64,000 nt of DNA, taken from Haliotis rubra (lineage: Eukaryota). Below the pieces are notes generated by a model that had not been told where the DNA came from, made no database searches, and saw only the letters and a list, made by a program, of their open reading frames with translations. Location: the NCBI RefSeq assembly GCF_003918875.1, contig NW_025767019.1:992001-1056000 (forward strand), written 5' to 3'. Shown in pieces: positions 10,390-64,000 of this stretch. Each line of letters starts with the position of its first letter. Positions within the stretch are counted from its first letter, which is position 1. Position numbers and translations under genes: made by a program.

Positions 10390-10429
<40 letters not shown>

Positions 10430-25058: not shown

Positions 25059-26606
25059 TCATCTTTTTTTCTCTTCTTTTTCTTCTGGTTGTAGTTTATC
25101 ATTCATCTGAAACTGACAGAGCAGTCATAATATTACCAAAATACTAAAATACTTTCCAGTAAAAGGTTGTCTTCAAAGGGATTCACCTTCTATGAACGTT
25201 TTGACCATACTTTTGGAGCGTTCACGTGAGGGGGTAACACACCTCATAGAATGCATATGTGGCCATGGTGTACAAATGCCATTATATTTATTGTTACACC
25301 ACTTAACAAAACACACATGTATATGGGCTTTATCGAGGACCCTGTTGGTGGTTCCATGACATTTTATACCACATTTTAGACACACCATCCTCGCGAAGTC
25401 AGTAAGTTGCTCCATTTGGCTTTGTCGCATATAAACTTACGACAAAAAGTCAGGGGAAACGATGACATTATACTGACAATAAATATGTGTAAAATCAGTT
25501 TTGACTTTGAGAAACAATATCTTCGGTGTCCTCCATGTTGGGTGAGACATATAGGACACCTTGATGGCATACTTTCGCATGTTTCCCCATGTTATTGCTA
25601 ACCATTCCGCCTGACGAGCTATCACCTCACCCTGTCAAACTATAAATAGACAGGATCTTTATGGGACAACAAAAGTTTGGGTCATTAGTTGTTGTTGTTG
25701 TTTGTTTTGTATTTCTTTCTTTCTTTCTTTCTTTTTTTTTTTTGGGAAATCAGTTATCACTACAAAAGAAAGAAAAATATATGTAAACAATACACTTCAG
25801 TATGTAATGCAGGTCATAGTCGGTGAAAGCAGATATATGCTATGAAGTTTCAGGCGCTCAAGACATTTTCTTTGTTTTATCGTTATTAGTTAGTGAGTGA
25901 GTGAGTTTAGTTTTACGCCGCGCTCAGCAATATTTCAGCTATTTGGTGGCGGTCTGTAAATAATCCTTTTTATTTATTGACATGAACAACGTATCTCTAA
26001 CTTGTTACAGCGCGAGTAAACTGTCGTCCGAAAATAACTTGTCTTAATCTTTACAATTTGAAAGTAAGTAAGCATTAGATCCACAAACACGAGCAAAGGG
26101 TTGGATCCGGAAATGTATAAGATGAACGAAAGCATAAACTCCGACGATAAGCAAAGTAGGGCAAAAGTTACTGTTTCGAAATACCTGTCCAAGGGGCCGA
26201 AGACGCTGTCAAGTGATCTCACTGACTTGTCTGAAACGCTATAAGGTATTTCAAAATAAATAAAGCGTGAACCTGACGTGGCAAGGAGGCAAAAGGAACA
26301 GTTTTCATGTTTCAGTCCATGCATTAAGTTGTGTGTGGTCGCCATGTGGCCTAACCCTGCGACCATGTACACTGTGATACAAGTAAACATTTCAAAGATT
26401 TAATAAAATACGCTTACCTGCCGCATATATGACTGTGTGTTGATAAAATTGATAGCGTACGAAAATCTCGTCTGCTTGACCCCGTTCCTTCCCCGGAACT
26501 ACCGATATTCAGCGTACGTTTACAACACGCATTTTAATTGGCCGTCGACATCTCGATTATCCAATGACTGTACGCTTAACTGCAATGAAGAAGTAAAGGA
26601 TTCAAG

Positions 26607-35600: not shown

Positions 35601-38600
35601 GGCAATTGCACATTGTCATAATTTATCAACTTTGAAAGAACTTTCTTCTGTATTGTTACTAAAGCTGAACAATTTCTTTAAATACCAAAGATCACAAGTG
35701 GTCAGAGTCCTTGCAAATGAACAGATTTGACACCTTAATTATTTATCCATAGTGCCTTCTCCGAGCAATGGCCTTTAATCCTGTCTTTGAGCACCGACAT
35801 TAGTCCTGTCAGGAGTTATGGTACAGCTATGCAGCTCTCAGTTAAAGACAAATGTACATTTTATCTTGAATTAAGGCATAACTCACATGCAAAGATCTGG
35901 GTTAGAATTGGTCTTCAGTGACCCATGCTTGTCATGAGAGGTGACTAAGGGGATCTGGTGTTCAGGCTTGCTGACGTGGTTGACACGTCGTTTCTCAATC
36001 ATTTATCTGGACCAGACTTGATTATTAAAAGACTGCCGCCATTTGCTGAAATATTGCTGAAATATCAGAGTACAGCATTAAACAACAAGGAACTACATAA
36101 ATCAATAGAACTTGTATGGTGTGGTGGTTTGAGTGTCTGTCTAGAGAACTGATAGTCGATACTTCGTCCTGCATCATAGCTGAAGATATTGTACTTGCTC
36201 AGTCCTTGGCTTATTGTCGTGAAAGATAACCAATGGAACCAGTGTATGAAATAAGGCCTGTCCGACCACCGAGACGGTCTAGATTTCTGATGGATGGTCT
36301 AAATTTACAGCTAGCCAGCCCGATGGTCTGGTAAAAATTTAGATGTTCCATACATCTGAGTAAATTCACCATATTGGCGTGGTTAAATCCAATTTGGGCT
36401 GGTAACATTTTGAAGTTACCAGCCCTGATGTCTGGCTGGAGTTTGGGCTTATTTCATACACTGATGGAACTCTTGTTCCCCTGGCAGCATGGCGGGACTA
36501 AAACCAGCATTAGTTTCTCTGTCTCGACTAGCACACCCACACAGGTATGAACTGCACTATTTAATCATGGTGCAACAGTCTTGAACACAATGTCAGACCC
36601 CATTTGTCTTTACTACACTTGACACGATTCCATAATGTGTTGTTCTGTTGTCCAGGTTGGTGCCCGTCTGATCGCCCACTCTGGCAGTCTGACGAACCTG
36701 GCCAAGTACCCTGCTTCCACTGTGCAGATCCTGGGAGCAGAGAAGGCGCTCTTCAGGTAGGGTCTCTCATATCACTAGGCCTGTCCGAGGGGTTTCAGGG
36801 TACCTACTACCTCGTGAGTCTAACTGACGGGTCTCGGGAAAGGGAAAAGGCTCCCAACACTACTTTTCTGTCTTGCTAATGGTCTACAGGGTAGGCCCCC
36901 AGTACCCCTTGTCTGTCTGCTAGTGAGGAGTTCAGGACAGAATATGTGTAAAGTGATGGTATTTCCCAATGTGTCTAGACTGCCTCCGTGGTGTAGTGGT
37001 TAGAGCATCTGCCCGGAGAGCGGAAGGTCGCGGGTACGATCCCCCGACCACGTCATACCAAAAGACGTTAATATATGGTACTTGTTGGACCCTGCCTGGC
37101 TCGGCATTAATGGGTACAACAAGGACTGGTCGGCTCAGAGTCAGTATAATGTGTCTGAGTGGGGTATTCATGCTTCACTGCGGCATGGTATCTCAATGGG
37201 CTAGCACTATAAAACCAGCTTAAGTCTTGGCTAGTATAAGCAGCCGCACATACACATACACACGCATACACGTCGTCATATGAGCAAAATATTCTCATGC
37301 ACGACGTTAAACCCAATTTCACCACATATCACCTCACCTCCCAATGTGTCTGCCACAGTTACTTCATGTTTGATAAGTCCATCAAATCTTGATTAGTTTT
37401 AAAACTTTAGTGACCTGAAGTCGTGCATCTGTAAGTGTTTCATGTGGAGGGTTTTGGTTTCAGAGCTTTGAAGACTCGAGGAAACACTCCAAAGTACGGA
37501 CTTATCTTTCACTCCACCTTCATTGGTCGAGCTGGCTCAAAGAACAAGGGCAGAATATCTCGCTACCTGGCCAACAAGTGTTCCATTGCTTCCAGGATTG
37601 ACTGTTTCTCTGGTGAGAAATAAACCATGCTAACACACCCTAATATTCAAAGGGCCCGTGAAGATCCGGGGTAGAATTGGTCTTCAGCAACCCATGCTTG
37701 CCACATAAGGCGACTATGCTTGTCGTAAGAGGCGACTAACGGGATCGGGTAGTCAGGCTCGCTGACTTGGTTGACACATGTCATCGGTTCCCAATTGCGC
37801 AGATCGATGCTGATGCTGTTGATCACTGGATTGTCTGGTCCAGACTCGATTATTTACAGACCGCCACCATATAGCTGGAATATTGCTGAGTGCGGCGTAA
37901 AACTAAACTCACTCACTCACTAATATTCAAAGAGTCATAAGTATATGCTAATAGGTTTGTTCAGTAAGGTTATGGAACCATTGCGGATCCTGTTCGGATA
38001 CAGGTTTGGAATGGGCTCCTTGTAACCTAGTCTTGTCTTGAGAGGAGACAAGTGGATTAGTTATCAGGAAATTACATCTTCAACCTGACTGAGATTGTAG
38101 GGGGTTGTAGGGTAGCTGAGAGGTTGTAGGGGGTTTTGGGGTAGCTGTGAGATTGTAGGGGGTTTCTGGGTAGCTGTGAGATTGTAGGGGGTTGTGGGGT
38201 AGCTGTGAGGGGGGTTGTGGGGTAGCTAGCTGTGAGGTTGTGGGTAGCTGTGTAGCTAGTTGTAGGGTGTTGTGGGGTAGCTGTGTGATTGTGGGGTAGC
38301 TGTGGGATTGTAGGTGGTTGTGGGGTAGCTGTGAGATTGTAGGGTGTGGGGTAGCTGTGAGATTGTAGGGGGTTGTGGGGTAGCTGTGAGATTGTAGGGC
38401 TGTTGTGGGGTAGCTGTGAGACTGTAGGGGTTGTGGGGTAGCTGTGAGATTGTAGGGGGTTGTGGGGTAGCTGTGACATTGGGGTTGTGGGAGTGAGATT
38501 GTGGGGTAGCTGTGAGATTGTAGGGGGTTGTGGGGTAGCTGTGAGGTTGTAGGGGGTTGTGGGGTAGCTGTGAGACTGTAGGGGTTGTGGGGTAGCTGTG

Positions 38601-40021
38601 AGACTGTAGGGGGTTGTGGGGTAGCTGTGAGATTGTATTGTAGGGGCTGTTGTTGGGGGTTGTAGCTGTGAGATTGTAGGGGGTTGTGGGGTAGCTGTGA
38701 GATTGTAGGGAGTTATGGGGTAGCTGTGAGGTTATAGGGGTTGTGGGGTAGCTGTGAGATTGTAGGGGGTTGTGGGGTAGCTGTGAGACTGTAGGGTGTT
38801 GTGGGGTAGCTGTGTAGAGATTGTAGGGGTTATTAGGGTAGCTGTGATGTTATTGTAGGGGGTTGTGGGGTAGCTGTGAGACTGTAGGGGGGTTGTGGGG
38901 TAGCTGTGAGATTGTAGGGGTTGTGGGGGTAGCTGTGAGATTGTAGGGAGTTCTGGGGTAGCTGTGAGGGGTTGTAGGGGGTTGTGGGGTAGCTGTAGCT
39001 GGGAGCTATTGTGGTAGCTGTGAGGGTTGTAGGGGTTGTGGGGTAGCTGTGAGGTTGTAGGGCGTTGTGGGGTAGCTGTGAGATTGTAGGGGGTTGTGGG
39101 GTAGCTGTGAGATTGTAGGGGGTTGTGGGGTAGCTGTGAGCGGTGGGGTAGCCTAGTGGTTAGAGCACCCCCTCGTCACGTCAAAGACATGGGTTCAAGT
39201 TCCCACATGGGTACAATGTGTGAAACCTATTTCTGGTGTCCCCAGCCATAATATTGCTGGAATAGTGCTAAAATCGGTGTAAAATCATATTCACTCATTT
39301 ACTCAATGGGATTGTAGCTCTCAATACCTATCACTGGCTTTTATGTCCTAAACTCTTCATGTAGAATCCACTGTGAAGTTAAAGAAAATGTGTTGTATTT
39401 CTGACAGAATACCCAACAACTGTGTTTGGGGAGCATCTACGGCAGCAGGTGGAGGACAGGCTGACCTTCTATGAGAGCGGCACAACGCCAGCCAAGAATG
39501 TGGATGTTATGAAGCAAGCTGTGGAGGAGGTGAGTCTATGAAGGAAGGGATACAGGATGGCTTGGGTGGAAGATGGGACATTTTTCATTGGGTTTGTAAC
39601 AGATGACTGATAAACTGCCTAGTTGTGTGGTTGGATTTAGTGCCTGTGTAGGGTAGAATTAGTGTCTTAGTTTCAGGGCTTGTGCCTGTGTGGCAGGATT
39701 TACTGGAATGGTATTCAACATTCATTTTGTGTTATGGACTCTTTAAAGAACCATATTTTTCTTCACTTTCAGGCTGTGGTTGTTCAGGCCAAGCTGGCAA
39801 AGAAGGAGAAGAAGAAGAGGAAGAAGGAAAAGAGGAAGCTAGAAGAGTCTATTGGTGCCAACACAACTGGAGATCTTGACACTACACAAGAGGATGAGCA
39901 GATCCCCAAGAAGAAGAAGAAGAAAAAGAAGAATGCTGATGAAAGCATGGAGGTTGAGGAGGAGGAAGAAGTTGAGGAGCAGACGCCCAAGAAGAAAAAG
40001 AAGAAGAAGAAGAAGGATTAA
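26607..40021 (+). CDS. NOP56: Nucleolar protein 56 (box C/D snoRNP core); 10 exons, ~512 aa
   Basis: Exons: 26607-26609 (ATG only, inferred by analogy to human; lower confidence), 30308-30515, 32608-32775, 33850-34048, 34777-34964, 35421-35572, 36656-36756, 37464-37612, 39408-39529, 39773-40021. Motifs [86 protein letters not shown], and a K/E-rich tail. Confidence 0.96.
28343..29888. mobile_element. hAT-type MITE containing a nested MITE
   Basis: TAGGGCTGCAACGA ... TCGTTACAGCCTTA, with 8-bp TSD TGATATAG (28335-28342 / 29889-29896). Confidence 0.8.
28602..29703. mobile_element. Nested MITE, AAGTACTGTCGGAAAT TIR family
   Basis: CTAAAGTACTGTCGGAAATAGAAAAA ... TTTTTCTATTTCCGACAGTACTTTAG; same termini as 22596-23172. 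Confidence 0.8.
31030..31629 (-). mobile_element. L1/Tx1-type LINE 3' fragment (zf-RVT domain)
   Basis: ORF has [18 protein letters not shown]...CGYC...E..DHLFWYC...W, the CCHC zf-RVT motif. Confidence 0.8.
32205..32447 (+). mobile_element. SINE-like family B, full length
   Basis: Same sequence as 37653-37919, with (ACTC)n tail. Confidence 0.85.
34430..34682 (+). mobile_element. tRNA-derived SINE family A (rearranged copy)
   Basis: GGGGCGGTGGGGTAGCCTAATGGTTAAA head, CCCACATGGGTACAATGTG body, CTCAGTCAGTC tail. Confidence 0.75.
36240..36463. mobile_element. MITE with TIR CAGTGTATGAAATAAG
   Basis: CAGTGTATGAAATAAG ... CTTATTTCATACACTG with ATGGAAC duplicated at both ends. A partial second copy lies at ~42845-42892. 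Confidence 0.8.
36772..36926 (+). other. Putative structured RNA element at the 5' end of NOP56 intron 7
   Basis: Nested pairings TCACTAG/CTAGTGA, GAGGGGT/ACCCCTT and CCTAC/GTAGG. Contains an internal GTGAGT donor, a CTGA and an acceptor-like GCTAAT..CTACAG. Confidence 0.5.
36978..37339 (+). mobile_element. tRNA-derived SINE family C (V-SINE-like)
   Basis: tRNA-like head and GTCGGCTCAGAGTCAGTATAATGTGTCTGAGTGG core. 12-bp TSD CCCAATGTGTCT. Second copy at 50815-51170 (-). Confidence 0.8.
37653..37919 (+). mobile_element. SINE-like family B, full length
   Basis: 13-bp TSD CTAATATTCAAAG (37640-37652 / 37920-37932). Confidence 0.88.
38090..39140 (+). repeat. G-rich ~29-bp minisatellite
   Basis: Unit GAGATTGTAGGGGGTTGTGGGGTAGCTGT. 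Confidence 0.95.
39140..39305 (+). mobile_element. tRNA-derived SINE family A
   Basis: GCGGTGGGGTAGCCTAGTGGTTAGAGC...CCCACATGGGTACAATGTGTGAA. Confidence 0.8.
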
Positions 40022-48915: not shown

Positions 48916-49061
48916 NNNNNNNNNNNNNNNNNNNNNNNNNNNNNNNNNNNNNNNNNNNNNNNNNNNNNNNNNNNNNNNNNNNNNNNNNNNNNNNNNNNNN
49001 NNNNNNNNNNNNNNNNNNNNNNNNNNNNNNNNNNNNNNNNNNNNNNNNNNNNNNNNNNNNN
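48916..49061. other. Assembly gap (N run) within a degenerate ~70-bp repeat region
   Basis: Run of N. Confidence 0.99.
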
Positions 49062-51170: not shown

Positions 51171-51275
51171 GTTTGTGGAAAGTGAAGGGTTCGCACAAAG
51201 ACAACATTGAAATCGAGATGCACGTGCATCTTGCATGCATTCAGGCATAAATTGCCGGCTTGAATGGCAAACATT

Positions 51276-51562
51276 CACTTGTTTTCTGAACACATCAGCT
51301 ATGGCTAGGTTAACGAGAGGTGTTGATGGACGATATGACGGTCCTGGCGACGTGATGTTACATGGGATCAACCACTACGTGGACGGTCATCAGTGCTGTT
51401 GGGGGCATGTATCGCTGTCTCAGACGTTCTATCGTTCGTAAGCTGCAATTGAAGTCATTAGTAATGACTCGAGCACGTTGACCAGCGTCTAGACGTCCAA
51501 TGGCTTGTTGCCGTTGATCTCGCGTTAACATAGCCATAGCCGCTGTGTTCAGAAAACAAATG
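51276..51562 (-). mobile_element. Tc1-like transposase N-terminal (HTH) remnant between ~40-bp inverted repeats
   Basis: MLTRDQRQQAIGRLDAGQRARVI.NDFNCS.RTIERLRQRY. Inverted TTGTTTTCTGAACAC...GTTAACGAGAG / CTCGCGTTAAC...GTGTTCAGAAAACAA. Duplicated at ~57528-57817. Confidence 0.7.
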
Positions 51563-52571
51563 AACTTGACTTCCGGTGTAAATGTGAAAACAAATACTCC
51601 ATTGATACTTAAATGTCATTTCCAATATTACGACGTTTCTTTTGCCTTTCAGTATATTCCACACAGTGGCTAGCTTTAATAGGTAGAAGAAATATCTAAA
51701 AGCCAGTATCTGCAAAACTGGGGAACTGGTATGGAGGGTTCGGGGGTAGCCTTGTGGTTAATGCGTTCGCTTGTCACCTCGAAGACCCGGGTTCGATTCC
51801 CAGTATGGGTAAAATGAAGCCTATTTGTGGAGTCCGCCGCCGTGATATTGCTTGAATACTGCTACAAGCAGCGTTAAACCAAATTCTCTAACTCACTCAC
51901 TCACTCAAGCGGTTCGTAACGCAAACAATTTAAAAAAACCTTTTCTTGTGAAAAGTATATCTTCTCGCTCAAAATGGTATTCAAGCTGGTTCTCAAATTT
52001 AGAACTACAATCCATACCCTGCCAAGCTGAAACCGGTCGCTGGTACACTATTTCGAGAGTGGAACGGGTGTCAGCTACCTAACTCGCATGATCAGGGGAA
52101 GGAGTTTCAGTCTCTTGTCAGGGAGCGGGCATTTTAGGTTGGATAACTTGTCACCAATCCCTTTCACATTTGTGAATAAAATATGTTGAAATCAAATCAA
52201 GCCCTTCTCCAGTAAGCAAGTCGTCACAATCCGAAAGCAAATCTGTTCAAATTCTCAAAAAGAGAGAAAACATTTCTTTTGAAAATAATTTATATACTGT
52301 TTAAACATGTTACTGTTGAAACTTAATACCATATCCTGTCATCTTAAAATGAATTGTTAAGAACTCCCCTGCGCTGGATACAATTGCTAAAACAAAAACC
52401 CAGTCAGATAAAGTTTTATGTCTATTTTTTATTATTTCTTTTTATTTATTTTGTTTTCAAATTTGTATTCCTCTAAAGATGTTACATGAGACATACATGG
52501 TGTATATGCATTGTACAGGACATGAGAAATGAGAAATATATATGGTATATATATATAATTATATATTATAA

Positions 52572-54041
52572 TTACAGGGCTGTAGCCGGTAAAGCCACAT
52601 TTCCAATAGATTAATTAATTAATGGATTACCGTAACCGGTATAAGAGTGTCCCCATGTATAATATTGTTTTCACAAGAAACGAATAATCTTTCCTACTCA
52701 CAAACGTGGTGTTTAAGCAATACCGGTAAAGGACTGTTCCTACACTAAACGCTAAAAGAAACGTTACCCTCTTACCTTTATGAATTACTTAAAAACTATC
52801 AAAGATATGTTAGAAGGTATTAGTTTACAAGAGAGCTTAACAACACAGCTTTATGCAAATCACGAACCAAATTCTCAAACGCATTCATATTTAGGTGAAA
52901 TGCATCTTTTTCAGAAGAGTTAAATTGTCCTATTTTCGACCATGCCGAAATAAACCAATAACAATGATTTAGATGTCCAAAAGAAAGGGTGAAATAAAAT
53001 TCTGCTTTGAGACAGAGATAAACCATTTAAAGTCACCATTTTTCAATTATTAAAACAAGAAACAACTGTTGTAGAGTGTGTAAAATTGTAAAAGAATCAT
53101 ACCTATGATTTCAGTCTTTAAAAAGATTTTCTGCTGATTTGCATTAGTGAAAACAAGTACAACGTATCTTTGATATTGTGCAAAAGTGTTTAGGAACACA
53201 TCAACTTATCTTTGTTAACATTTGTGCTTGCAAAGTAACATTTTTCCATTTTCTGTTTACACACAGCAATATCAATCACCAAAACGTAGAAATATTCAAG
53301 CAGTATTTGCATCAATTTCACGTACAGAATGATTTTATAGGGTATAAAGAGAGCCTAGAATGTCCAGATTAATCTAACTGATTTCGAAAACCAGGGACAC
53401 CGTACCAACAATCTAGAAGGATGGCACAATAAGGTAAAGAGACTTGTCCAAAAGTGCAAACCCTGACATTTACGAGATCGTAAAGCTCTTTCAGCGTGAG
53501 CAGTCTCTCACAGAGGTTGCTGTCCTGAGACTATCTGACCAGTGGACAGCACCTTCACGAAGAAAGAAATATAATACGCTCGTATTGCATCACTGAAGAC
53601 CAAGCTTCTGAACCAACACCTGAGTGACATGGAGTATAGGACCATGTGGGCGACCTCCTTCATCTGCAGTAGGGGGTGTAAAAAAGAATGTTTGTAAATG
53701 ATGTTTTGTGATCTTACGCCATTTTATCTGGTTTTACACATGGCAACAAACTTAACCATTATCATTATTATTATGTTTTACAGATTAAGATGTATTATTA
53801 TGTGATAATATTATATCTAAAATACCTATTAGTATATTACATGTATATTTTGCCAATTATAGAAATGAAATATGTTGTGATCTGAATAAACCTATGAGGA
53901 AACATGTCTTGTTAGTTAAATACGGTAACCTGTTTGAATCACTAAATATGTTTTGACAGCCACTTCCATCTTCACGCAACCATATCAGCAACATCAATTT
54001 TGGCTATCTGTTTCGGAAATGTGGTTTTCCCGGCCTGTAAC
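52572..54041 (+). mobile_element. Mutator (MULE)-derived element with transposase remnant
   Basis: Degenerate TIRs (..AAAGCCACATTTCC.. / ..GGAAATGTGGTTTTCCCGGCCTGTAAC). Internal remnant GHRTNNLEGWHNKVKRLV...PDIYEIVKLFQREQ at ~53395-53520. Second copy at ~58661-59947. Confidence 0.65.
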
Positions 54042-55036
54042 CACTTTCTACCGCACTCCCCAACACAAACAATTATACCGAGCCTTCTGATATTGTTGTT
54101 CAACGTCAGTGGTACACTGTCCAGTCATCTGCATTCCTTTGTTTTCCAGCCAAACAACGAGTTTTAATCTTCAATGGATGTTATTAACTGTGTAACTATA
54201 TTTACACATTGCCTAATGCCTAAATAAAAACAAATTGAACCACTGTCTTCCTCCCTGCCTGGTCCAGTGTGTTGGTACAAACATCGCCTCTAATACTGTG
54301 TGTATTGCTGATACTGCTAGCATTGTTAACTCATCTTTATAGGCAATTGCACATTGTCACGTGTGTAGCATGAAGCACCCATCACCCATTTGTACACACA
54401 GCATTTATTCCAACCTCAATTATCGGTATATTTGATGCCCGCCTGGATTATCACTCGGGGAATAATCTCCCCTCATCCCCGTACAGAAACGCTGGACACA
54501 CAAGCCATCACCGTTTGTCCCCAAGCTGGAGCGCTGGTCACTCACAAGGTGCTAGCTTCCTATAATTGCTCCGTTTTAGTCGGGATTTGTTGTTTCAGAG
54601 TTACAGACGCTGTTTGCCTTATTACACCGTCATTAGACTGAAGTGTTAACGATAGTATGCAGTAGTTGTTAATTAGTTTGTGTATGTAATCAGGTCATTG
54701 ACGGTGTGTAGGTATATATACAGTTTGGGAAACTGCAGAGGGCATCATTATCTAGCTACTGTTGTATAAGACACAGGGCAGTTCAAGAAACTTTACACTG
54801 CCTAAAACAGGAAGACATAGACACTACGGGTAAGGATTCCGCCTACAAGACGTTATAATGGTTTGCTTACAACCAGAATCATGATAACTTCCATCAACAT
54901 CTTCCAAGGATGGAGATGAAAATCACATATTATTTGCTGTACTCCAGCGTGCTACATCAGTAACATTTCTGTTGTATCTTAATAATATGAATTTGACTCA
55001 TTTTATAACACTGTCGATATTTGTTTTCAGGTTAAA

Positions 55037-57088
55037 ATGACTCCTTCTGCAATGTCCTTGATGAACACACTTTGCCTTGATAGTCCTGATCACGTGACAT
55101 CTGGTCGTCTTTCTATTCCTGAAGATGCCGGCGTCTTGCCTCGCAGCCTCACTTTCGATGACGACGATGACTCACGTGACAGCGGTTTCGAATCTCACGG
55201 AAGTGATTCCGAGGTAAAACTCCAAACTGTGTTACTATTTCCACAGATCAAGAAAACATGCTTTTAAAGTTTGGCAAGTATGGGTAAACACACAATACAC
55301 ACCCATATCTTTATCAAGAACCAAACCAAACAATGCACCTTCAGAGAGTAATCTTAATATTCCCTAACTTAGGATCCTGCGGACTCTGGGATAGATTAGG
55401 CCCCAGGAACCCGTGCTGGTCTTAAGAGGCGATGAAAGGGATCCGTGGTCTGACTCGGTGGTGGATTGAGCGTCACCATAGCCTGACGTCGTGTATCGTT
55501 CCTCATTTTATCAATCACTGGATTTTCTGGTCCAGCGGTCATATAGCTGGACTATTTCCTCCTCTACCAAAAACAAAACAAAACGAAACCTGTTACAATT
55601 ATGAATGTATTGCCCTTCTCCATTTACAGGGATCCCCACTCAATTGTTTTCTGTCGATCAGAACAATCACCGACTTCAGTTCAGTCAAAAAATCTTTATT
55701 CTCACCAAAACGGCCACGTGATGAGGATGACAGCCCAACAGCAAAGAGATCTAGATGTGATGACGTCATGTGTCGTGAAGAGCTCTATATTTTGGAATCC
55801 CCCGAATCCATGAAATCAGCTGTGGATAAAATGGAGGCGGAAATCAATCTGATTGGCGATGGCTCAAAGGTAATAATCTATGCATGCATGGAAATATTCA
55901 CAAAGAACTCAAGTTTTGCTGAAATGGTCCACGGGATCTGTCGCTCATTTATTTTGGTTTGTCATATTTGATTGTATAATGGAGTCATTATTTGTTCTCC
56001 AGTGTCACAGGCTCCCGACCATCACAGGCCGACACAAGGATCTCAAGTCAGTGTCTCCACGAACAGTCAGTCAACTACTGACAGGGAAATACGATGACGT
56101 CATTTCCGGGTACCAGATCATCGACTGTCGCTACCCATATGAATATGAGGGTGGTCATATAGAGGTAAATACATGTAATAAGTTATTTGTTGTCATTTGA
56201 GACTGTAATGATGTAATATCTAGTCTATCTATCTAGAACATAAACATCCCTAATAAGGTCCAGAACACATTCTGTGCATCTTGTCATCCCCCAAATCCAC
56301 GTTCTTACAGGGTGCCATCAATCTCCACAACGAGGCTCAAATCTCGGAGTTAGTCACCAGCCTACGAGTGAGGGAGTCGACTCAACGGGACATCCTGGTC
56401 TTCCATTGTGAATTCTCCTCAGAGAGAGCGCCCAAACTGTAAGTTGCCCTTGTGTACCTGGTTTTATCTGTCTCTCTTCTCTCACCCTTAACTTTGTTGA
56501 ACTGACCCGAACCTTGGCATTGAAACAGTTTTACGCTGTGATGCACAGTTCATACCGACATGTTCCTCATCTGATGCAATCTTTCTTAACCCCAGATTAC
56601 GCCATCTGCGGAGTTTAGACCGGAAGTTGAACAGCGACTGCTACCCGTTCCTCTTCTACCCGGAAGTGTACTTACTGGACGGCGGTTACAAGGCTTTCTA
56701 TGAACAACATCAGGTACGTTCACAGTTGTTGTTTCAGTAAAGTAATTATACTTGACTCAAACTTTGGCTAAATCTAAAACGAGCGCAACTTGGGGAGGAG
56801 TAAACTTAGAAACGCCATATCTAGTTTTTTTATATTTTATTAATACATCACGCATTTCGCAAACATTTGCTTTACAAGAGATCACACAAGTAAGGTTACT
56901 GACAAAGGTGCTTGTTTCAGCGACAGTGTCAACCAAACACCTACATTCCCATGCTGCACGAGGACTACGCCAGTCAACTACGTCACTTCCGGTCTAAGTC
57001 CAAGACGAACAAGACCGCGAAAAAGAAATACGTGCGCAGTCGGAGCTTAGAAATAGATGTTTCACCACTGAAGTTTTCCCACTTATGA
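55037..57088 (+). CDS. CDC25: CDC25/string-like M-phase inducer phosphatase, copy 2 (intact, 330 aa)
   Basis: Exons 55037-55213, 55630-55869, 56003-56164, 56311-56438, 56596-56713, 56921-57088 (993 nt, GT-AG, phases consistent). Rhodanese-fold active site [21 protein letters not shown], and AATAAA at 57206. Confidence 0.92.
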
Positions 57089-57444
57089 GGCTGACATCAC
57101 TCAACGATCACGATGACATTGTTGCTATTTATATATTGTTATGTAATCTTTAACTTGTTGACTGTTTTCTGCATATAGTGCTGGTTGTCTGTGGTATAAA
57201 TCCGAAATAAAGTTGAAATATACGCACCCACTTCTTCTATCAATATGTTTTCAAGATTTACAACTGACTTGCTTTCGCTTGTGTTTGTGACGGATGTGGC
57301 AGGACACGCTCACCTTGTGAGATTACTATTTGATAGTCTCTCAAAACCGTGCAATAGGTGAATGAGTGAGTTTGGGTTTTACGCCGCTTGTAGCAATATT
57401 CCAGCAATATCACGTCGGAGGACACCAGAAATGGGTTTTCAATG

Positions 57445-60249
57445 GCACAAAGACAACATTGAAATCGAGATGCACTTGCATCTTGCATGCATTCAGGCAT
57501 CAATTGCCGGCTTGTATGGCAAACATTCACTTGTTTTCTGAACACAGCAGCTATGGCTAGGTTCACGAGAGGTGTTGATGGACGAAATGACGGTCCTGGC
57601 GACGTGATGTTACATGGGATCGACCACTACGTGGACGGTCATCAGTGCTGTTGGGGGCATGTATCGCTGTCTCAGACGTTCTATCGTTCGTACGCTGCAA
57701 TTGAAGTCATTAGCAATGACTCGAGCACGTTGACCAGCGTCTAGAGTACGTCCAATGGCTTGTTGCCGTTGATCTCGCGTTAACATAGCCATAGCTGCTG
57801 TGTTCAGAAAACAAATGAACTTGACTTCCGGTGTAAATTTAAAAACAAATACTCCATTAATACTTAAATGTCATTTCCAATATTACGACGTTTATTTTGC
57901 CTTTCAGTATATTCCACACAATGGCTAGCTTTAATAGGTAAAAGAAATATCTAAAAGCCAGTATCTGCAAAACTGGGGGTAGCTTTGTGGTTAATGCGTT
58001 CGCTTGTCACCACGAAGACCCGGGTTCGATTCCCCATATGGATAAAATGAAGCCTATTTGTGGAGTCCGCCGCCGTGATATTGTTTTGAATACTGCTACA
58101 AGCAGCGTTAAACCAAATTCTCTAACTCACTCACTCAAGCGGTTCGTAACGCAAACAATTTAAAAAAACTTTATCTTGTGAAAAGTATATCTTCTCGCTC
58201 AAAATGGTATTCAAGCTTGTTCTCAAATTTAGAACTACAAGCCATACTCTGCCAAGCTGAAACCGGTCGCTGGTACACTATTCCGAGAGTGGAACGGGTG
58301 TGTCAACTACCTAACTCGCATGATCAGGGGAAGGAGTTTCACTCTCTTATCAGGGAGCGGGTATTTTAAGTTGGATAACAATCCCCAATCCCTTTCACAT
58401 TTGTGAATAATATATGGTTAAATCAAATCAATTCCTTTTTAGTAAGGAAGTCGTCACAATCCAAAAGCAAATCTGTTCAAATTTTCAAAAAGAGAGAAAA
58501 CATTTCTTTTGAAAATAATTTATATACTGTTTAAACATGTTTAAATAATGTTATCCTGCCATTGAAAATGAATTTTAATAACCATATCCTGCCATCTTAA
58601 AATGAATTCTATTTTTTTTAAGAACTCCTCTGATGCTGGACATACAATTGCTAAAACATGAAAGCCACATTTCCAATAGATTAATTAATTAATGGATTAG
58701 CGTAACCGGTATAAGAGTGTCCCCATGTATAATATTGTTTTCACAAGAAACGAATAATCTTTCCTACTCACAAACTTGGTGTTTAAGCAATAACGGTAAA
58801 AGACTGATCGTACACTAAACGCTAAAAGAAACGTTACCCTCCTACCTTTATGAATTACTTAAAAACTCGAGATATGTTAGAAGGTATTAGTTTACAAGAG
58901 AGCTTAACAACACAGCTTTATGCAAATCACTAACCAAATTCTCAAACGCTTTCATATTTAGGTGAAATGCATCTTTTTCAGAAGAGTTAAATTGTCCTAT
59001 TTTCGACCATGCCGAAATAAACCAATAACAATGATTTAGATGTCCAAAAGAAAGGGTGAAATAAAATTCTGCTTTGAGACAAAGATAAATCATTTAAAGT
59101 TACCATTTTTCAATTATTAAAGCAAGAAACAACTGCTGTGGAGTGTATAAAATTGTAAAAGAATCATTCCTATGATTTCAGTCTTAAAAAGATTTTCTGC
59201 TAACTGCTTTAGGAACACATCAACGTATCTTTGTTAACATTTGTGCTTGCAAAGTAACATTTTTCCATTTTCTGTTTACACACAGCAATATCAATCACCA
59301 AAACGTAGAAATATTCAAGCAGTATTTGCATCAATTTCACTTACAGAATGATTTTATAGGGTATAAAGAGAGCCTAGAATGTCCAGATTAATCTAACTGA
59401 TTACGAAAACCAGGGACACCGTACCAACAATCTAGAAAGATGGCACAATAAGGTAAAGAGACTTGTCCAATAGTGCCACCCTGACATTTACGAGATCGTA
59501 AAGCTCTTTCAGCGTGAGCAGTCTGTCACAGATGCTGCTGTCCTGAGACTATCTGACCAGTGGACAGCACCTTCACGAAGAAAGAAATATAATACGCTCG
59601 TATTGCATCACTGAAGACCAAGCTTCTGAACCAACACCTGAGTGACATGGAAAAACTAAACCATTATCATTATTATTATGTTTTACAGATTCAGATGTAT
59701 TATTATGTGATAATATTATATCTAAAATACCTATTAGTATATTACATGTATATTGTGCCAATTATAGAAATGAAATATGTTGTGATCTGAATAAACCTAT
59801 GAGGAAATATGTCTTGTTAGTTAAATACAGTAACCTGTTTGAATCACTAAATATGTTTTGACAGCCACTAACATGTTCACGCAACCATATCAGCCACATC
59901 AATTTTGGCTATCTGTTCGGGAAAGGTGGTTTTCCCGACCTGTAACCACTTTCTTCCGCACTCCCCAACACAAATAATTATACCGTGCCTTCTGATATTG
60001 TTGTTCAACGTCAGTGGTACACTGTCCAGTCATCTACATTCCTTTGTTTTCCAGCCAAACAACGAGTTTTAATCTTCAAAGGATGTTATTAACTGTGTAA
60101 CTATATTTACACATTGCCTAATGCCTAAATAAAAACAAATTGAACCACTGTCTTCCTCCCTGCCGGGTCCAGTGTGTTGGTACAAACATCGCCTCTAATA
60201 CTGTGTGTATTGTGATACTGCTAGCATTGTTAACTAATCTTTATAGGCA
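57445..60249 (+). repeat. Segmental direct repeat, copy A'
   Basis: Colinear with 51193-54345. Confidence 0.9.
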
Positions 60250-60344
60250 TATAGGATAATCTCCCCTCATCCCCATATAGAAACGCTGGACACACAAGCC
60301 ATATCGTCCATTTTGAATTTCTAATGAGGTTCATGGTTTTGAGT

Positions 60345-60515
60345 CTATTTTTAGATGATGAGTCATTGTTTCAGGTTATATTTAGACCATGAGTCATATC
60401 AACATCTGTTGTTTCTATTTTTAGAAGAGTCTATTTTTAGACCATAAGTTATGATTCTATTTTGTCGACTCAGGTGGGTAATAAAAGGTCCCCCGAACAG
60501 TCCTCCATATCATTC
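60345..60515 (+). promoter_or_regulatory. MEF2-like / AP-1 motif cluster with TATA-like and Inr-like elements
   Basis: CTATTTTTAG at 60345, 60415 and 60431; TTATATTTAG at 60376; TGAGTCA at 60359 and 60390; TAATAAAAG at ~60479; TCATTC at ~60510. Confidence 0.55.
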
Positions 60516-60597
60516 TGACTTCAATCGCCAGAGAGAACGTCCCTTCTCCATTCTATGTTCTTGACTCTACTGGTTCTTGTAGCTGTTTACCTCGAAG

Positions 60598-61134
60598 ATG
60601 GAAACCGTTCACCGTGATATTCTCAGTTGTGATAACGAGGCGCTGGTAAAACTTCAAAATCCCAGATGTCATTTACATCTAGGGGGCGACGTCTATGTGA
60701 CAGCCAAGACATGGAATGGAGAACTAGAAATTCATGTGAGGAAGTACGAAGTATACCCGAGTGGCAAGTGCTACCCAACCAAGCGAGGCATCGTGCTTAC
60801 CTTGAAACACTGGCTGGAAGTGTCTAGTGTTCACGTGCAGCTGAAACAGCAGGGAAGGTACTCACACGTCCATGTTGGAGGGAACATGTACGTTTCCTGG
60901 GACGACAATGGTATTGATGTGCGACAGTGGGAGAATGATCAGAAAAGTGGTAGAGTGATACCTACCAACCAATGTATTCTGTTGTCTCTAGATCAGTGGG
61001 AAAAGCTGGTAGATTGTGTAAGAGTCATGTTTGACTTTGTGCCAGAACTGATGCTTCAGGACGATCATCAAAACCAGATGGGATACCTCCAGTGTTCCTT
61101 TTGCATCCCTAGTGACTACAGTCACTGCGTGTAA
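60598..61134 (+). CDS. Intronless tandem PC4/Sub1-like (ssDNA-binding fold) protein with C-terminal H/C motif
   Basis: Two repeats, HLGGDVYVTAKTWNGELEIHVRKY...PTKRGIVLTLKHW and HVGGNMYVS..GIDVRQW...IPTNQCILLSLDQWEKL, followed by DHQNQMGYLQCSFC. Confidence 0.75.
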   Translation: METVHRDILSCDNEALVKLQNPRCHLHLGGDVYVTAKTWNGELEIHVRKYEVYPSGKCYPTKRGIVLTLKHWLEVSSVHVQLKQQGRYSHVHVGGNMYVSWDDNGIDVRQWENDQKSGRVIPTNQCILLSLDQWEKLVDCVRVMFDFVPELMLQDDHQNQMGYLQCSFCIPSDYSHCV

Positions 61135-61193
61135 AGCCATTCTTGGTTTAGACGCTGTACTGTGCGGACGTGTTACCACTGCTCTGGGATATC

Positions 61194-61529
61194 ATGGATG
61201 TTTGTGGACATTACCCACTTGACAACACTGTCATTGCCGATTGCTGTGCAATCAAGACTGAATGGACTTCATTCCAGAAAAGACTCGATTCGTTTAAAGA
61301 CTGGCCAGTGCAGATGAAACAGAGTCCTAGTCACATGGCCCAGGCAGGATTTGTGTACTTAATCAGAGGGGACGCTTGCAAGTGTTTTCAATGTGGTCTC
61401 GTTCTCAAGAACTGGGAAGTAGAACATGAAAAATGGTCTCCAGATTGTCCATATTTGGCCCTGGTGGGAGTACCTCAGAAAGAGGTGGCCCGCTGGGGTA
61501 GTCATGTGGATTTGCAACCAAGAGTGTGA
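61194..61529 (+). CDS. Intronless single-BIR inhibitor-of-apoptosis-like protein (BIR with internal deletion)
   Basis: RLDSFKDWP...MAQAGFVY..GDACKCFQCGLVLKNWE.EHEKWSPDCPYL. The C-to-H spacer is 10 aa instead of 16. Confidence 0.8.
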   Translation: MDVCGHYPLDNTVIADCCAIKTEWTSFQKRLDSFKDWPVQMKQSPSHMAQAGFVYLIRGDACKCFQCGLVLKNWEVEHEKWSPDCPYLALVGVPQKEVARWGSHVDLQPRV

Positions 61530-61674
61530 TGTAAAATGTGTGACTATTGGAAATAAATCAATGTTAAGAGTATGTCTGCCTTGGTTGTCTATGTATAGTA
61601 TTAATAGAGGTTTACTCAAATACTTATCTCATTGAGATCCCAACCACGATAAGAGTTTGTTTGCTAGAAATAGT

Positions 61675-62081
61675 ATGGCTAGGTACGTGTTGAAACATTA
61701 CGAATTTTTAAGGTTCATGTTAATGTTTCAAGACATTGAGGAGATTCGACAAGACATCTTAGAAATGAACAGAGAACAGATTCTTGCCATCAATGGTATT
61801 ATCAATAGGTTATTAAAGGGAAGATTACCAGTGACTCAATATGAAAGACGTCGTTTCCTGAGGAAAAATGATAGAAATAACTATCTAGAAGATTAGTTCA
61901 CCCCCTGTGGACGACAGACAGTATGTGGAAGAGTCTTTTTGCCAGTAACATGCCAATCGTAGCATTTGTTTTGAAACCACAGTTTGTCAATGCACTTAGA
62001 GATGAGGCCATTCAAAATGCCTGGTTGTTAGATAGAGCATTGGCTAAGTATGTTTGGTACACCTGGTTTAGTTTGTCATAG
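61675..62081 (+). pseudogene. Frameshifted small basic ORF resembling a Maverick/Polinton accessory ORF
   Basis: MARYVLKHYEFLRFML...EQILAINGIINRLLKGRLPVTQYERRRF, continuing in another frame as RRLVHPLWTT...FSLS*. Family resemblance is from memory, not from a search. Confidence 0.4.
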
Positions 62082-62309
62082 TAGTGCATCCAAAACATCC
62101 TGGCAGTGATGTTGAAAGCTATACCAAGCCCAAGGTCAATGAAGATGTCTATATAACAGGCCACAAGGGCTATCTAACTTCATTTAGCCGTGGACCAGTG
62201 ACAGTGACGCATCACCTCAAGCCGCTCCCGTTTTCATCATGAATAATCCACAATACAAACTCTTCGTACCCGATGCCGAAAAATGGACAAAAGTTTACAT
62301 GCTCAGGAC

Positions 62310-64000
62310 TGAGTGAGTGAGTGAGTTAATATTTAACGTCACATCGGCAATATTTCAGCCATATCGTGACGTGAACATTATACATTGAAATGGAATAGAT
62401 GTAGATTATACAACCTGTCTACGAAGGACAGTAAAACAACTGGAATATCACAGATATACATGTAAAACTAGTAATTAAATCTAAAATATTTGAACTATAG
62501 GTGAAAACACAATATAAAAATAGGCTATATATCGCCAACAACTGAAGGTAGATCACCATACTAGAGACCATGGGGACTTACAGTACATTTGCTTCCTGCA
62601 TGGACCCTAGCTGGATTTACACCATCCCTTCAGCTATTAGCAATTTTAGAAAATCTAGCCACAAATTAAACGAACATATATTCTACGATTAAAATGGTAG
62701 AAGGTTTAAATCCACTTCGAATGTATTGGGACTTACGTACCCTCTCAGGAGGACAATAAAACTACGTATCTTTAAAATACATCTATCTACAGAACATATT
62801 AATCAAAATTCATCAATCAAATCAATTTCTTTTAAAAAACCAAGAATTAAATGAACATGAACAGTGTTAAAAAGATCCTTAACAGTTTTAACATTGAAAT
62901 AGTTATCCCTTATGATGGAGAATTCGACAAATTCAAGCAGGAGATGCTTGACTGTGACTCTCTCATCACAGGGGATACAAAGCGGAGGATCTTCACCTTT
63001 CAACAAGTATTTGTGAGTATACCTTGTATGGCCAATACGACATCGTCGCATGATGACCTCCTCAAATCTGGACTGACAACCCAAGTGAGTGTAACCAATA
63101 TAAGGTTTTATTTCATGTAATTTGTTAATACCTACTGGGGTGTCCCACTGCTTTTGCATCAGATCACAGATGTAAGTTCTAATGCTAGCTTTGTAATCAG
63201 AGTATGGAATAAGAAGTGGTGTACAGATTTGTTGAGTGCTGCCTTAGCAGCAAGATCAGCCATAGTATTCCCACAAATGCCAACGTGGCTGGGTAACCAA
63301 CAAAAAACGATGTCGCATTGGCCAGTAGCAAGATCATTATACAATTCAATAATTTCTAATAAAAGTGGATGTTTACAAGAAATATTTTTAATAGCCTAAA
63401 GACACGAAAGAGAATCGGAAAAGATGATGTATTGTTTATATTTACGGTAGTTATTGATATATCTAAGAGCTGTTAATATAGCGTGAGCTTCCGCTGTGAA
63501 AATAGAACTGTTATTTGGTAATCGAGAAGATATTGTTCTGGATCCAATGACAGTGGCACAAGCAACCGTGCCACCATCCTTGGACCCATCTGTAAATAAG
63601 GATTTATATGGATTATATTTACTTTTTAATTGATTATATTCTTGTTTATATTGTAATTAATTTGTTTCCGATTTTTAAAAGTTGTTAGTGTTAGGTCAAC
63701 TTCTGGTCTAACTAACTGCCAAGGAGGAGAAGAAAACAGACGGGAAGAAGATATATTTTCTAGCTCAATACCAGCAGCAGAAATGAAAGGTTTGACTCTT
63801 AGTCCCAGAGGCGGAACAAGAGAAGACTTTGTATTGTAGAGATCCTCATAAAGAGGATGAAAAACACAGTTAAATGCAGGGTTAGACTCGTGAGAATATA
63901 ATTTGGTTATATACTGTAAGGATAATTTTATACCGCGTTGGCTAAGAGATGGCTCATCAGCCTCAACGTACAGACTGTCAATAGGAGAAGTTCTGAAAGA
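62310..64000 (-). mobile_element. I/Nimb-like LINE 3' portion with RNase H and CCHC domain, degraded
   Basis: LFTDGSKDGG..., SIFTAEAHAI, IIFSDSLS, FCWLPSHVGICGNTMADLAAK, RCRIGHTRYTH..C..C....TVKHLL; stops and frameshifts present; (ACTC)n 3' tail. Confidence 0.88.

What the first reader, a model, noticed from the sequence alone, without database searches (positions are those of the whole stretch)
60303..62309. Endogenous virus-like cassette carrying a tandem-PC4 gene and an IAP (BIR) gene
Seen: in a genome where every host gene has introns, four co-oriented intronless ORFs are packed into 1.7 kb. They are a double PC4-fold protein with a C-terminal H..CxxC motif, a single-BIR protein, a basic ORF, and MNNPQYKLFVPDAEKW.. 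(preceded by TATATAA, then cut by a LINE). Established: BIR proteins block apoptosis and are used by large DNA viruses; PC4 folds bind ssDNA. Inference: an early/accessory region of a Maverick/Polinton (adintovirus-like) element with anti-apoptotic cargo. Such elements could contribute to the expanded IAP repertoires of molluscs. No polymerase, integrase, ATPase or capsid gene is visible in the window.
Basis: partly seen in the sequence, partly recalled or inferred. Interest (0 to 1): 0.8.

Follow-up and report, generated by a model that had tools for sequence, protein, structure and literature searches.

The report
Truncated Maverick end with PC4–BIR cargo
This 2-kb stretch is the decayed left end of a Maverick/Polinton virus-like element in an abalone-type genome, and its DNA-binding (tandem PC4) and anti-apoptosis (BIR) genes belong to a module that sits at the same end of complete elements in other snails and in bivalves.

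Summary
Window 60303-62312 is a discrete unit. Its left boundary is fixed to the base by two uninterrupted paralogous sites in the same window, and its right boundary is the 3' tail of a minus-strand LINE.

The unit holds:
- a terminal inverted repeat (TIR) with a TATA-like promoter
- a tandem-PC4 ORF
- a single-BIR ORF
- two conserved small Maverick genes, one broken and one cut by the LINE

A Haliotis rubra copy is colinear over exactly this stretch. It continues into a packaging-ATPase homologue and a matching right TIR, giving a 6.7-kb internally deleted derivative.

In all seven other loci with enough flank (Haliotis, Gigantopelta, Pecten, two unnamed assemblies), the PC4 gene is followed by a chromodomain rve integrase. 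Most of them also carry a double-jelly-roll capsid gene, an adenain-like protease, the ATPase and protein-primed PolB. The nearest BIR relatives (84, 62 and 51% identity) are also Maverick-linked, whereas host-type IAPs reach at most about 50%.

IAP homologues in adintoviruses are already published. I found no description of the PC4(+CARD) end gene. The window copy itself is a relic.

The parts
60303..60509 (+). Left terminal inverted repeat of the element. It holds three copies of TCTATTTTTAGA, two of ATGAGTCAT, a TATA-like TAATAAAAG at 60479-60487 and a conserved block after it.
   Evidence: Homology to the H. rubra element starts at 60303. In H. rubra this stretch is repeated, inverted, at the other end (arms 9683-9845 / 16193-16355 at 96%, plus 9897-9923 / 16061-16087). 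Alignment A2 shows the TATA-like box and the following block conserved in the window, both L001 ends, L003 and L006. The three TCTATTTTTAGA copies are the only ones in the 64 kb.
60510..60597 (+). Leader between the TIR promoter and the first gene.
   Evidence: Conserved with L001 and L003 upstream of their PC4 genes. That it is transcribed is inferred.
60598..61134 (+). Tandem PC4-fold gene (178 aa, CARD-less variant). The ORF is open but carries one 6-codon in-frame deletion relative to all 14 aligned relatives.
   Evidence: Pfam PC4, two stretches. AF2 core pLDDT 81-96 with two beta4-alpha units. Foldseek matches PC4 (TMt 0.76-0.84), PUR-alpha repeat I-II, MoSub1, phage T5 PC4-like protein and Whirly. 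88% identical to H. rubra P0001. Family alignment A1.
61194..61529 (+). Single-BIR (IAP-type) gene, 111 aa. The ORF is open, with one 6-codon in-frame deletion relative to the H. rubra copy. AATAAA lies at 61552-61557.
   Evidence: Pfam BIR 62 bits here against 88 bits for the H. rubra copy. PDB BIR matches. Nearest relatives are P0017 84%, P0175 62% and P0199 51%, all in Maverick contexts.
61675..62081 (+). Conserved small Maverick gene 'ORF3' (127 aa in intact relatives). Broken here by one frameshift.
   Evidence: The intact H. rubra ORF (L001:11107-11490) is 35% identical, E=7e-24, to an ORF of the Gigantopelta Maverick. The window matches it in two frames. No Pfam family.
62144..62242 (+). 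C-terminal remnant of a ~145-aa Maverick gene. In complete relatives that gene lies between the integrase and ORF4, and its stop overlaps the ORF4 start (ATGA).
   Evidence: tblastn of the L003 147-aa ORF matches only its last ~30 residues here. The full gene is present in L002, L003, L004, L006, L007, L008 and L009. The same remnant is in L001, so the large deletion is shared.
62239..62312 (+). First ~24 codons of the conserved Maverick gene 'ORF4' (114-139 aa in relatives, basic tail), cut off by the LINE.
   Evidence: Matches L001:11675-12019 and L003:13166-13585. The Haliotis and Gigantopelta proteins are 57% identical, E=4e-31. In complete relatives the gene lies directly upstream of the capsid gene.
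62313..64000 (-). Neighbour, not part of the element: 3' part of a decayed LINE (RNase H region, C-terminal tail, 3' UTR, (ACTC)n tail abutting the element). It runs off the window.
   Evidence: Pfam RNase_H E=1e-4 and 3.5e-3 on two minus-strand pieces. Open segments listed. SINE-like copies of the tail occur elsewhere in the window.
59300..60302 (.). Neighbour: host flank that is part of a segmental duplication. It supplies the paralogous empty sites that fix the insertion point.
   Evidence: 59300-60302 matches 53281-54508 at 92-97%. Both 54462-54508 and 48372-48324 continue without the element.

Best explanation
Window 60303-62312 is the left-terminal 2.0 kb of an endogenous, internally deleted (non-autonomous) Maverick/Polinton element of the adintovirus-like kind. 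It was inserted into a duplicated host segment, later cut by a LINE, and is now decaying.

In the living element the TIR carries a TATA-type promoter that reads inward into an accessory module. The first gene of that module is a single-chain tandem PC4-fold protein, often with an N-terminal CARD. I take this protein to bind single-stranded DNA, most likely coating the strand displaced during protein-primed replication and possibly supporting transcription. It is followed in different lineages by a NADAR gene and/or a single-BIR gene that would hold off caspase-dependent death of the cell carrying a replicating element. CARD, NADAR and BIR together read as a host-control module.

Shown:
- the anatomy and boundaries
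- the domain identities and the PC4 fold
- the TIRs in a relative
- linkage to integrase, capsid, protease, ATPase and PolB in relatives

Inferred:
- promoter activity and early timing
- ssDNA binding
- anti-apoptotic action

The window copy itself is most likely inert.
For: - Discrete unit with exact ends.
- One colinear 2086-column match at 89% to H. rubra L001:9692-11748, with unrelated flanks, so these are separate insertions of the same deleted derivative.
- L001 element 9683-16355 has TIRs at 96% and a 539-aa zinc-finger-ATPase. This protein gives Pox_A32 and Adeno_IVa2 hits just below threshold and is 36% identical, E=2e-37, to the ATPase of the Gigantopelta Maverick.
- Complete relatives give Pfam rve plus Chromo, Peptidase_C5, DNA_pol_B_2 and NADAR.
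- The gene order PC4 -> (NADAR/BIR) -> integrase -> 145 aa -> ORF4 -> 435 aa -> protease recurs in Haliotis, Gigantopelta, Pecten and two unnamed contigs.
- The model of the 435-aa protein, though of low confidence, hits only double-jelly-roll major capsid proteins in its top 50.
- PC4 fold. 72 family members, all the named ones molluscan, several with CARD or CARD_2.
- dN/dS between the window and H. rubra copies is 0.52 (PC4) and 0.24 (BIR), so the genes were under constraint while the family spread.
- Starrett et al. 2021 (PMC8502044) report IAP and Bcl2 homologues in adintoviruses.
Against: - No hallmark gene is in the window itself. Membership rests on relatives.
- No target-site duplication could be shown. 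The window lacks the right end, and the L001 ends are flanked by an inverted rather than a direct short repeat.
- The ATPase Pfam hits are below the curated cut-offs.
- The capsid model has mean pLDDT 50.
- ssDNA binding, promoter activity and caspase or IBM binding are untested.
- In the window copy both open ORFs have in-frame deletions, ORF3 is frameshifted and ORF4 is truncated, so no function can be claimed for this copy.
- One BIR-bearing relative (L009) has an unrelated first gene instead of PC4, so the PC4-BIR pairing is not universal.
Confidence: 0.88

Rival explanations
1. The ORFs are host genes: a domesticated or lineage-specific immune gene pair (an ssDNA-binding CARD-family protein plus a small IAP) that only happens to lie near transposon debris, or a copy co-opted by the host after insertion.
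For: NCBI annotates relatives as host 'uncharacterized protein LOC...' and 'BIRC7-B-like'. Both ORFs are still open, and dN/dS is below 1 against the H. rubra copy. CARD and BIR are host apoptosis and immunity domains.
Against: Homology to the H. rubra copy stops exactly at the TIR end and at the LINE, and the flanks are unrelated. All seven relatives with flank are inside Maverick gene sets. The window ORFs carry in-frame deletions, and the neighbouring element genes are broken or cut. The dN/dS signal spans the time when the family was still spreading and says nothing about this locus.
Confidence: 0.06
2. Processed retrocopies of host mRNAs (the usual explanation for intronless mollusc IAPs), clustered by chance.
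For: The ORFs are intronless. The IAP literature ascribes intronless mollusc IAPs to retroposition (PMC8917759, PMC13159474). A LINE lies next door.
Against: There is no poly(A) tract at the end of either ORF unit. Four co-oriented genes are kept in one colinear block with a TIR in two species. No intron-bearing parent was found: the relatives whose gene length was checked (P0001, P0002, P0004, P0008, P0009, P0025, P0027) are intronless and element-borne. The LINE is in the opposite orientation and interrupts the block rather than ending it.
Confidence: 0.02
3. A fragment of a large DNA virus of molluscs (for example a herpes-like or nucleocytoplasmic virus, which also carry BIR genes) integrated in the genome.
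For: BIR genes are common in large DNA viruses of invertebrates (my own knowledge, not tested here). The genes are compact, intronless and overlapping (ATGA stop/start at 62239-62242).
Against: The linked genes in relatives are the Maverick set: rve integrase with chromodomain, protein-primed PolB, adenain-type protease, a small double-jelly-roll capsid protein, TIRs and a 7-20 kb scale. No large-virus gene was seen.
Confidence: 0.03

Closest known systems
Maverick/Polinton elements of animals, adintovirus-like class (Starrett et al. 2021, PMC8502044; Buck et al. 2024 preprint 10.1101/2024.03.25.586562)
   Same: Relatives carry protein-primed PolB, an rve integrase with a C-terminal chromodomain, an adenain-type protease, an A32/IVa2-like ATPase, a double-jelly-roll capsid protein and long TIRs. 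Anti-apoptotic cargo (IAP, Bcl2 homologues) is already reported for adintoviruses.
   Different: The window holds only the left end of a 6.7-kb-type deleted derivative. The end gene is a tandem PC4-fold protein (+/- CARD), which the papers I could search do not mention. No TSD was shown. The OTU-PolB and hexon criteria were not tested.
Human PC4 / yeast Sub1 / phage T5 PC4-like protein, and PUR-alpha repeats
   Same: The beta4-alpha unit is the same (TMt 0.76-0.84 to PC4). PC4 works as a dimer of two such units, and PUR-alpha builds the same unit pair within one chain. Here too the two units are in one chain.
   Different: This is a single-chain tandem with a conserved C-terminal Cys/His tail, and in many relatives an N-terminal CARD. 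It is encoded by a mobile element. Nucleic-acid binding is untested.
Cellular and viral IAPs (BIR-domain proteins)
   Same: One BIR domain well above Pfam threshold, with best PDB matches to NAIP, DIAP1, XIAP and cIAP BIRs.
   Different: Single BIR only, with no RING, CARD or UBA. Identity to multi-domain IAPs is at most about 50%. The window copy has an in-frame deletion inside the gene.
Intronless 'retrocopy' IAPs counted in mollusc IAP expansions (PMC8917759, PMC7831173, PMC13159474)
   Same: Intronless, dispersed, single-BIR genes annotated as BIRC-like.
   Different: Here the carrier is a DNA element with TIRs rather than retroposition. The papers searched do not mention Maverick or Polinton.

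Membership tests
Maverick/Polinton | Protein-primed family-B DNA polymerase | tested here: not met
   Absent from the window and from the L001-type derivative. Present in relatives that share the PC4 end gene: Pfam DNA_pol_B_2 3.8e-14 (L002) and 1.4e-24 (L004), also L007 and L008. The window copy is therefore a non-autonomous derivative.
Maverick/Polinton | Retrovirus-like (rve) integrase | tested here: not met
   Absent from the window and L001. Present directly downstream of the PC4/BIR genes in L002, L003, L004, L006, L007, L008, L009 and L011 (rve 1.7e-8 plus Chromo 4.7e-8 in L003).
Maverick/Polinton | Long terminal inverted repeats | tested here: met
   L001 arms 9683-9845 / 16193-16355, 96%. 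The window has the left arm, 60303-60509, and its right end lies outside the window.
Maverick/Polinton | 5-6 bp target-site duplication | tested here: inconclusive
   The window lacks the right end. The L001 flanks show an inverted GAATCCT/AGGATTC and no clear direct repeat.
Maverick/Polinton | FtsK/HerA-type (A32/IVa2-like) packaging ATPase | tested here: inconclusive
   Not in the window. The L001 539-aa ORF gives Pox_A32 20.9 bits (cut-off 22.8) and Adeno_IVa2 19.8 bits (cut-off 21). It is clearly homologous to the ATPase of the complete Gigantopelta element (E=2e-37).
Maverick/Polinton | Double-jelly-roll major capsid protein and adenain-type protease | tested here: met
   In relatives only. 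Peptidase_C5 3.1e-6 (L003). The model of the 435-aa protein P0225 (pLDDT 50) hits only double-jelly-roll capsid proteins in its top 50, with E down to 1e-8. The window keeps only the start of the gene that precedes the capsid gene.
Adintovirus-like class | Integrase with C-terminal chromodomain; PolB with N-terminal OTU-like domain; hexon recognisable by BLASTp against the reference adintoviruses | tested here: inconclusive
   Chromodomain met in relatives. The OTU domain was not examined because the loci end inside PolB. The hexon comparison would need a reference animal virus, which I did not fetch.
IAP (BIR-domain) proteins | BIR domain with its Cys/His zinc site at canonical spacing | tested here: inconclusive
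   Pfam BIR above cut-off in the window (62 bits) and in L001 (88 bits). The window copy has a 6-codon in-frame deletion within the gene that lowers the score, while the L001 copy aligns without gaps to canonical BIRs.
PC4/Sub1 (PF02229) fold | Beta4-alpha ssDNA-binding unit acting as a pair | tested here: met
   Pfam PC4, two stretches, 47 bits against a cut-off of 25. The AF2 core is confident. Foldseek matches PC4, MoSub1, T5 PC4-like protein and PUR-alpha. DNA binding itself is not testable here.
CARD-containing death-fold proteins | N-terminal CARD | tested here: not met
   The window protein and P0001 lack it. Relatives P0002, P0004, P0009, P0025 and P0038 have CARD or CARD_2.

The most novel reading that the evidence does not exclude
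The left end of a mollusc-wide Maverick lineage encodes a previously undescribed counter-defence island read from the TIR promoter. It would consist of a CARD-fused, single-chain PC4-type ssDNA binder that ties the element's replication intermediates to interference with host CARD signalling, a NADAR hydrolase that could undo ADP-ribosylation of DNA, and a minimal BIR. On this reading, part of the 'intronless IAP' and 'uncharacterized CARD protein' repertoire annotated in mollusc genomes is Maverick cargo and not retrocopied host genes.
Probability: 0.3. Interest if true: 0.7.

Novelty: new member of a known kind. Interest (0 to 1): 0.5.

Why it matters
- It gives a worked example, exact to the base, of a Maverick/Polinton end in an abalone-type genome. 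It also shows that a 6.7-kb deleted derivative inserted at separate sites.
- It identifies a conserved end gene (tandem PC4 fold, often CARD-fused) across gastropod and bivalve Mavericks. This is a candidate for the single-strand-binding function that protein-primed replication needs, and I did not find it described.
- It shows that the closest kin of this BIR are element-borne and that at least one annotated abalone 'BIRC7-B-like' gene model rests on such a copy. This bears on how mollusc IAP expansions, currently ascribed to tandem duplication and retroposition, are counted.
- The window copy itself is an ordinary relic.

Tried and rejected
- Host exon or retrocopy reading: rejected (see rival explanations).
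- Word-based protein search with the H. rubra BIR: only one candidate in the allowed length range. I therefore ran the exhaustive search with the window BIR.
- Sequence search of the 435-aa capsid candidate against PDB: no hit. Only the fold comparison was informative.
- Pfam on ORF3, ORF4, the 145-aa ORF and the 435-aa ORF: no family.
- First ORF of contig L009: not a PC4 relative.
- TSD search at the L001 ends: no clear direct repeat.
- The sigma-70 / terminator scan is irrelevant for a eukaryote and gave nothing.
- Literature searches for Maverick/Polinton together with PC4, CARD or mollusc cargo: nothing relevant. The supplements of Starrett et al. are not held.
- I did not scan viral contigs or fetch any named animal virus, so the hexon and PolB comparison with reference adintoviruses was left out.

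Slips, stated as required, with nothing deleted:
1. The table printed by my script gives match bounds that bracket the frame change in ORF3. In my working notes to myself I also spelled out what the two in-frame deletions remove. I do not repeat either here.
2. Look-ups of relatives returned unnamed assembly contigs (L008-L011) that carry Maverick-like gene sets and could be exogenous or endogenous. I only read their gene tables and ran Pfam and tblastn summaries on them. If these count as viruses of animals, those look-ups were a slip.
Full report
**1. The observation**

The four co-oriented ORFs are real.
- The first, 60598-61134 (178 aa), matches Pfam PC4 with two stretches (E=1.5e-12, 47 bits against a cut-off of 25). 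It also matches the human PC4 DNA-binding domain by sequence.
- The second, 61194-61529 (111 aa), matches Pfam BIR (E=7e-17) and the BIR domains of NAIP, DIAP1, XIAP and cIAP in the PDB.
- The third starts at ATG 61675.
- The fourth starts at 62239 with MNNPQYK..., and its start overlaps the stop of the preceding frame (ATGA).
- After 62312 a (TGAG)n run begins. This is the 3' tail of a minus-strand LINE whose RNase H remnants lie at 63162-63656.

No polymerase, integrase, ATPase, protease or capsid gene occurs anywhere in the 64 kb (tblastn).

**2. It is a discrete inserted unit**

The closest relative of the PC4 protein is an H. rubra protein (P0001, 88% identity). The DNA around it (L001) matches the window in one colinear block, window 60303-62312 to L001:9692-11748, at 89%. 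The flanks are unrelated apart from SINE-like repeats.

Inside the window, the flank 59300-60302 belongs to a segmental duplication. Its last 47-49 bases recur at 54462-54508 and, inverted, at 48372-48324, and both paralogues run on without interruption.

**3. What the unit belongs to**

In L001 the first ~240 bp are repeated in inverted orientation 6.3 kb downstream (arms 96% complementary). This bounds a 6.7-kb element, L001:9683-16355. Its gene order is:
- tandem PC4
- BIR
- ORF3 (127 aa, intact there)
- a short remnant of a ~145-aa gene
- ORF4 (114 aa)
- a 539-aa protein with C2H2 fingers and a P-loop ATPase

The ATPase gives Pox_A32 and Adeno_IVa2 hits just under the curated cut-offs. No integrase, capsid, protease or polymerase is present, so this is an internally deleted derivative. 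The window copy shares its internal junctions and sits at an unrelated site, so the derivative inserted more than once.

**4. Linkage to hallmark genes**

I looked at the surroundings of other family members.
- H. asinina L003 and H. rubra L002 have CARD-PC4, then NADAR (8.6e-42) and an rve integrase. In L003 I confirmed the chromodomain on the integrase, and found a 147-aa ORF, ORF4, a capsid-like ORF, Peptidase_C5 (3e-6) and a minus-strand ATPase. L002 has a minus-strand DNA_pol_B_2 polymerase (3.8e-14).
- Gigantopelta aegis L004 has an apparently complete set in the order PC4 (no CARD), a 223-aa BIR protein (3.9e-21), integrase, 145-aa ORF, ORF3 homologue, ORF4 homologue, 435-aa ORF, protease, ATPase and PolB (1.4e-24).
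- Pecten maximus L007 and the unnamed contig L008 repeat the pattern.

A summary tblastn with the Gigantopelta proteins finds an integrase downstream of the PC4 gene in 7 of 7 loci with enough flank. The L001 ATPase is 36% identical (E=2e-37) to the Gigantopelta one. ORF3 and ORF4 are conserved between the two snails (35% and 57% identity).

The 435-aa protein (P0225) is named 'F54H12.2-like' by NCBI and has 24 near-identical copies on many Gigantopelta chromosomes. It folded poorly (pLDDT 50), yet all 50 best Foldseek matches are double-jelly-roll major capsid proteins (Sputnik, PBCV-1, an iridovirus, mavirus, PRD1; E down to 1e-8). I take that as supportive and not conclusive.

The integrase-with-chromodomain feature is one of the published marks of adintoviruses.

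**5. The BIR gene**

The exhaustive search with the window BIR gave 4835 hits. The nearest are P0017 (84%), P0175 (62%) and P0199 (51%). Multi-BIR host-type proteins lie at 31-50%.
- P0017 is an H. asinina gene model named 'BIRC7-B-like'. Its locus (L005) is a degenerate copy of the same derivative, with a CARD remnant, BIR, an ORF4-like piece and the zinc-finger ATPase.
- P0175 lies directly upstream of a chromodomain integrase, capsid-like gene and protease (L009).
- P0199 lies after a PC4 gene and a NADAR fragment and before an integrase (L011).

The nearest kin of this BIR are therefore all element-borne. One caveat is that the library is clustered at 50% identity, so closer host relatives could hide inside those clusters. 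The 90% clusters of P0175 and P0199 each have one member.

**6. The PC4 gene**

A profile search finds 72 family members. All the named ones are molluscan (Haliotis, Gigantopelta, Mizuhopecten, Pecten, Tegillarca, Mactra, Ruditapes), and several have an N-terminal CARD or CARD_2.

The alignment shows an invariant C-terminal Cys/His motif. The AF2 model has a confident core (residues 21-150) made of two beta4-alpha units. The tail is not modelled with confidence. Foldseek returns PC4 (TMt 0.76-0.84, rmsd 1.3-1.9 A), MoSub1, the phage T5 PC4-like protein, Whirly proteins and, over both units, PUR-alpha repeats I-II.

PC4 acts as a dimer, and here the pair sits in one chain. From established knowledge, protein-primed strand-displacement replication needs a single-strand-binding protein, and none is recognised in Mavericks. 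That is my preferred role for this protein. It is an inference.

**7. The TIR as promoter**

The left TIR holds three copies of TCTATTTTTAGA, the only ones in the window. It also holds two copies of ATGAGTCAT, a TATA-like box 119 nt before the ATG, and a following block conserved in the window, both L001 ends, L003 and L006.

From memory, the repeated motifs resemble MEF2-type and AP-1-type sites. I did not test this. Inward transcription from the TIR is inferred.

**8. State of the window copy (counts only)**

| Gene | State |
|---|---|
| PC4 gene | Open; one 6-codon in-frame deletion relative to all relatives, and one 2-codon indel against L001 |
| BIR gene | Open; one 6-codon in-frame deletion |
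| ORF3 | One frameshift |
| ~145-aa gene | Only a C-terminal remnant, through a large deletion shared with L001 that also removed the integrase |
| ORF4 | Truncated by one LINE insertion |
| ATPase and right TIR | Not in the window |

dN/dS against L001 is 0.52 (PC4) and 0.24 (BIR). This reflects constraint during the family's spread, not at this locus.

**9. Comparison with what is known**

Starrett et al. 2021 state that adintovirus homologues of Bcl2 and IAP were observed, so BIR cargo is not new. Neither that paper, the 2024 survey, nor the searches mention a PC4-type or CARD gene in these elements.

Papers on mollusc IAP expansion ascribe intronless IAPs to retroposition and do not mention Mavericks.

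**10. Verdict**

- Novelty: a new member of a known kind, with an undescribed accessory gene family as the point of interest.

Noticed in passing
L003:10856-11266, L002:3773-4186, L006:17010-17417, L011:944-1132: A NADAR-domain gene (Pfam 8.6e-42) sits between the CARD-PC4 gene and the integrase in Haliotis Mavericks. It is absent from the window copy. NADAR enzymes are linked to removal of ADP-ribose, so this may be a counter-defence gene. That is my inference and was not tested.
   Followed up: partly
window 51193-54508 / 57445-60302 and 54401-57226 / 48432-45325: There is a complex segmental duplication around the insertion site: one direct pair (90-96% identity) and one inverted pair (85-94%). 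It supplied the paralogous empty sites.
   Followed up: partly
window 38090-39140: A G-rich 29-bp minisatellite (about 30 copies) explains the GC-skew spike of 0.77 in the composition profile.
   Followed up: no
window 48916-49061: A run of 146 N (assembly gap or masked).
   Followed up: no
L001:12070-13689 and L005:11208-11948: In the deleted derivative the packaging-ATPase homologue is fused to C2H2 zinc fingers and a proline/glutamine-rich linker, and it lies in the same orientation as the left-end genes. This matches the bivalve-type elements (L007, L008) and differs from L003 and L004, where it is on the opposite strand.
   Followed up: partly
L001:9660-9700 and 16340-16380: The two ends of the H. 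rubra element are flanked by an inverted GAATCCT / AGGATTC, not a direct repeat. The window copy starts 9-10 bases inside that motif. Unexplained: it could be a palindromic target, a nested insertion or an eroded terminus.
   Followed up: partly
L004:13773-14171, L003:13166-13585, L001:11675-12019, window 62239-62312: The ORF4 family has a conserved I-x-R-G-G motif and a strongly basic C-terminal tail, and it always lies just upstream of the capsid gene. It may be a core or DNA-condensing virion protein. No family match.
   Followed up: no
L004:7599-9546: A long tandem array (repeat unit encoding ~25 residues in an open frame) lies directly upstream of the Gigantopelta element's PC4 gene. Whether it is part of the TIR or of the flank was not determined.
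   Followed up: no
window 62312-62371 and copies at 25892-25951, 32390-32448, 37862-37921: Short SINE-like repeats share the LINE's 3' tail region, which suggests a LINE/SINE partner pair in this genome.
   Followed up: no
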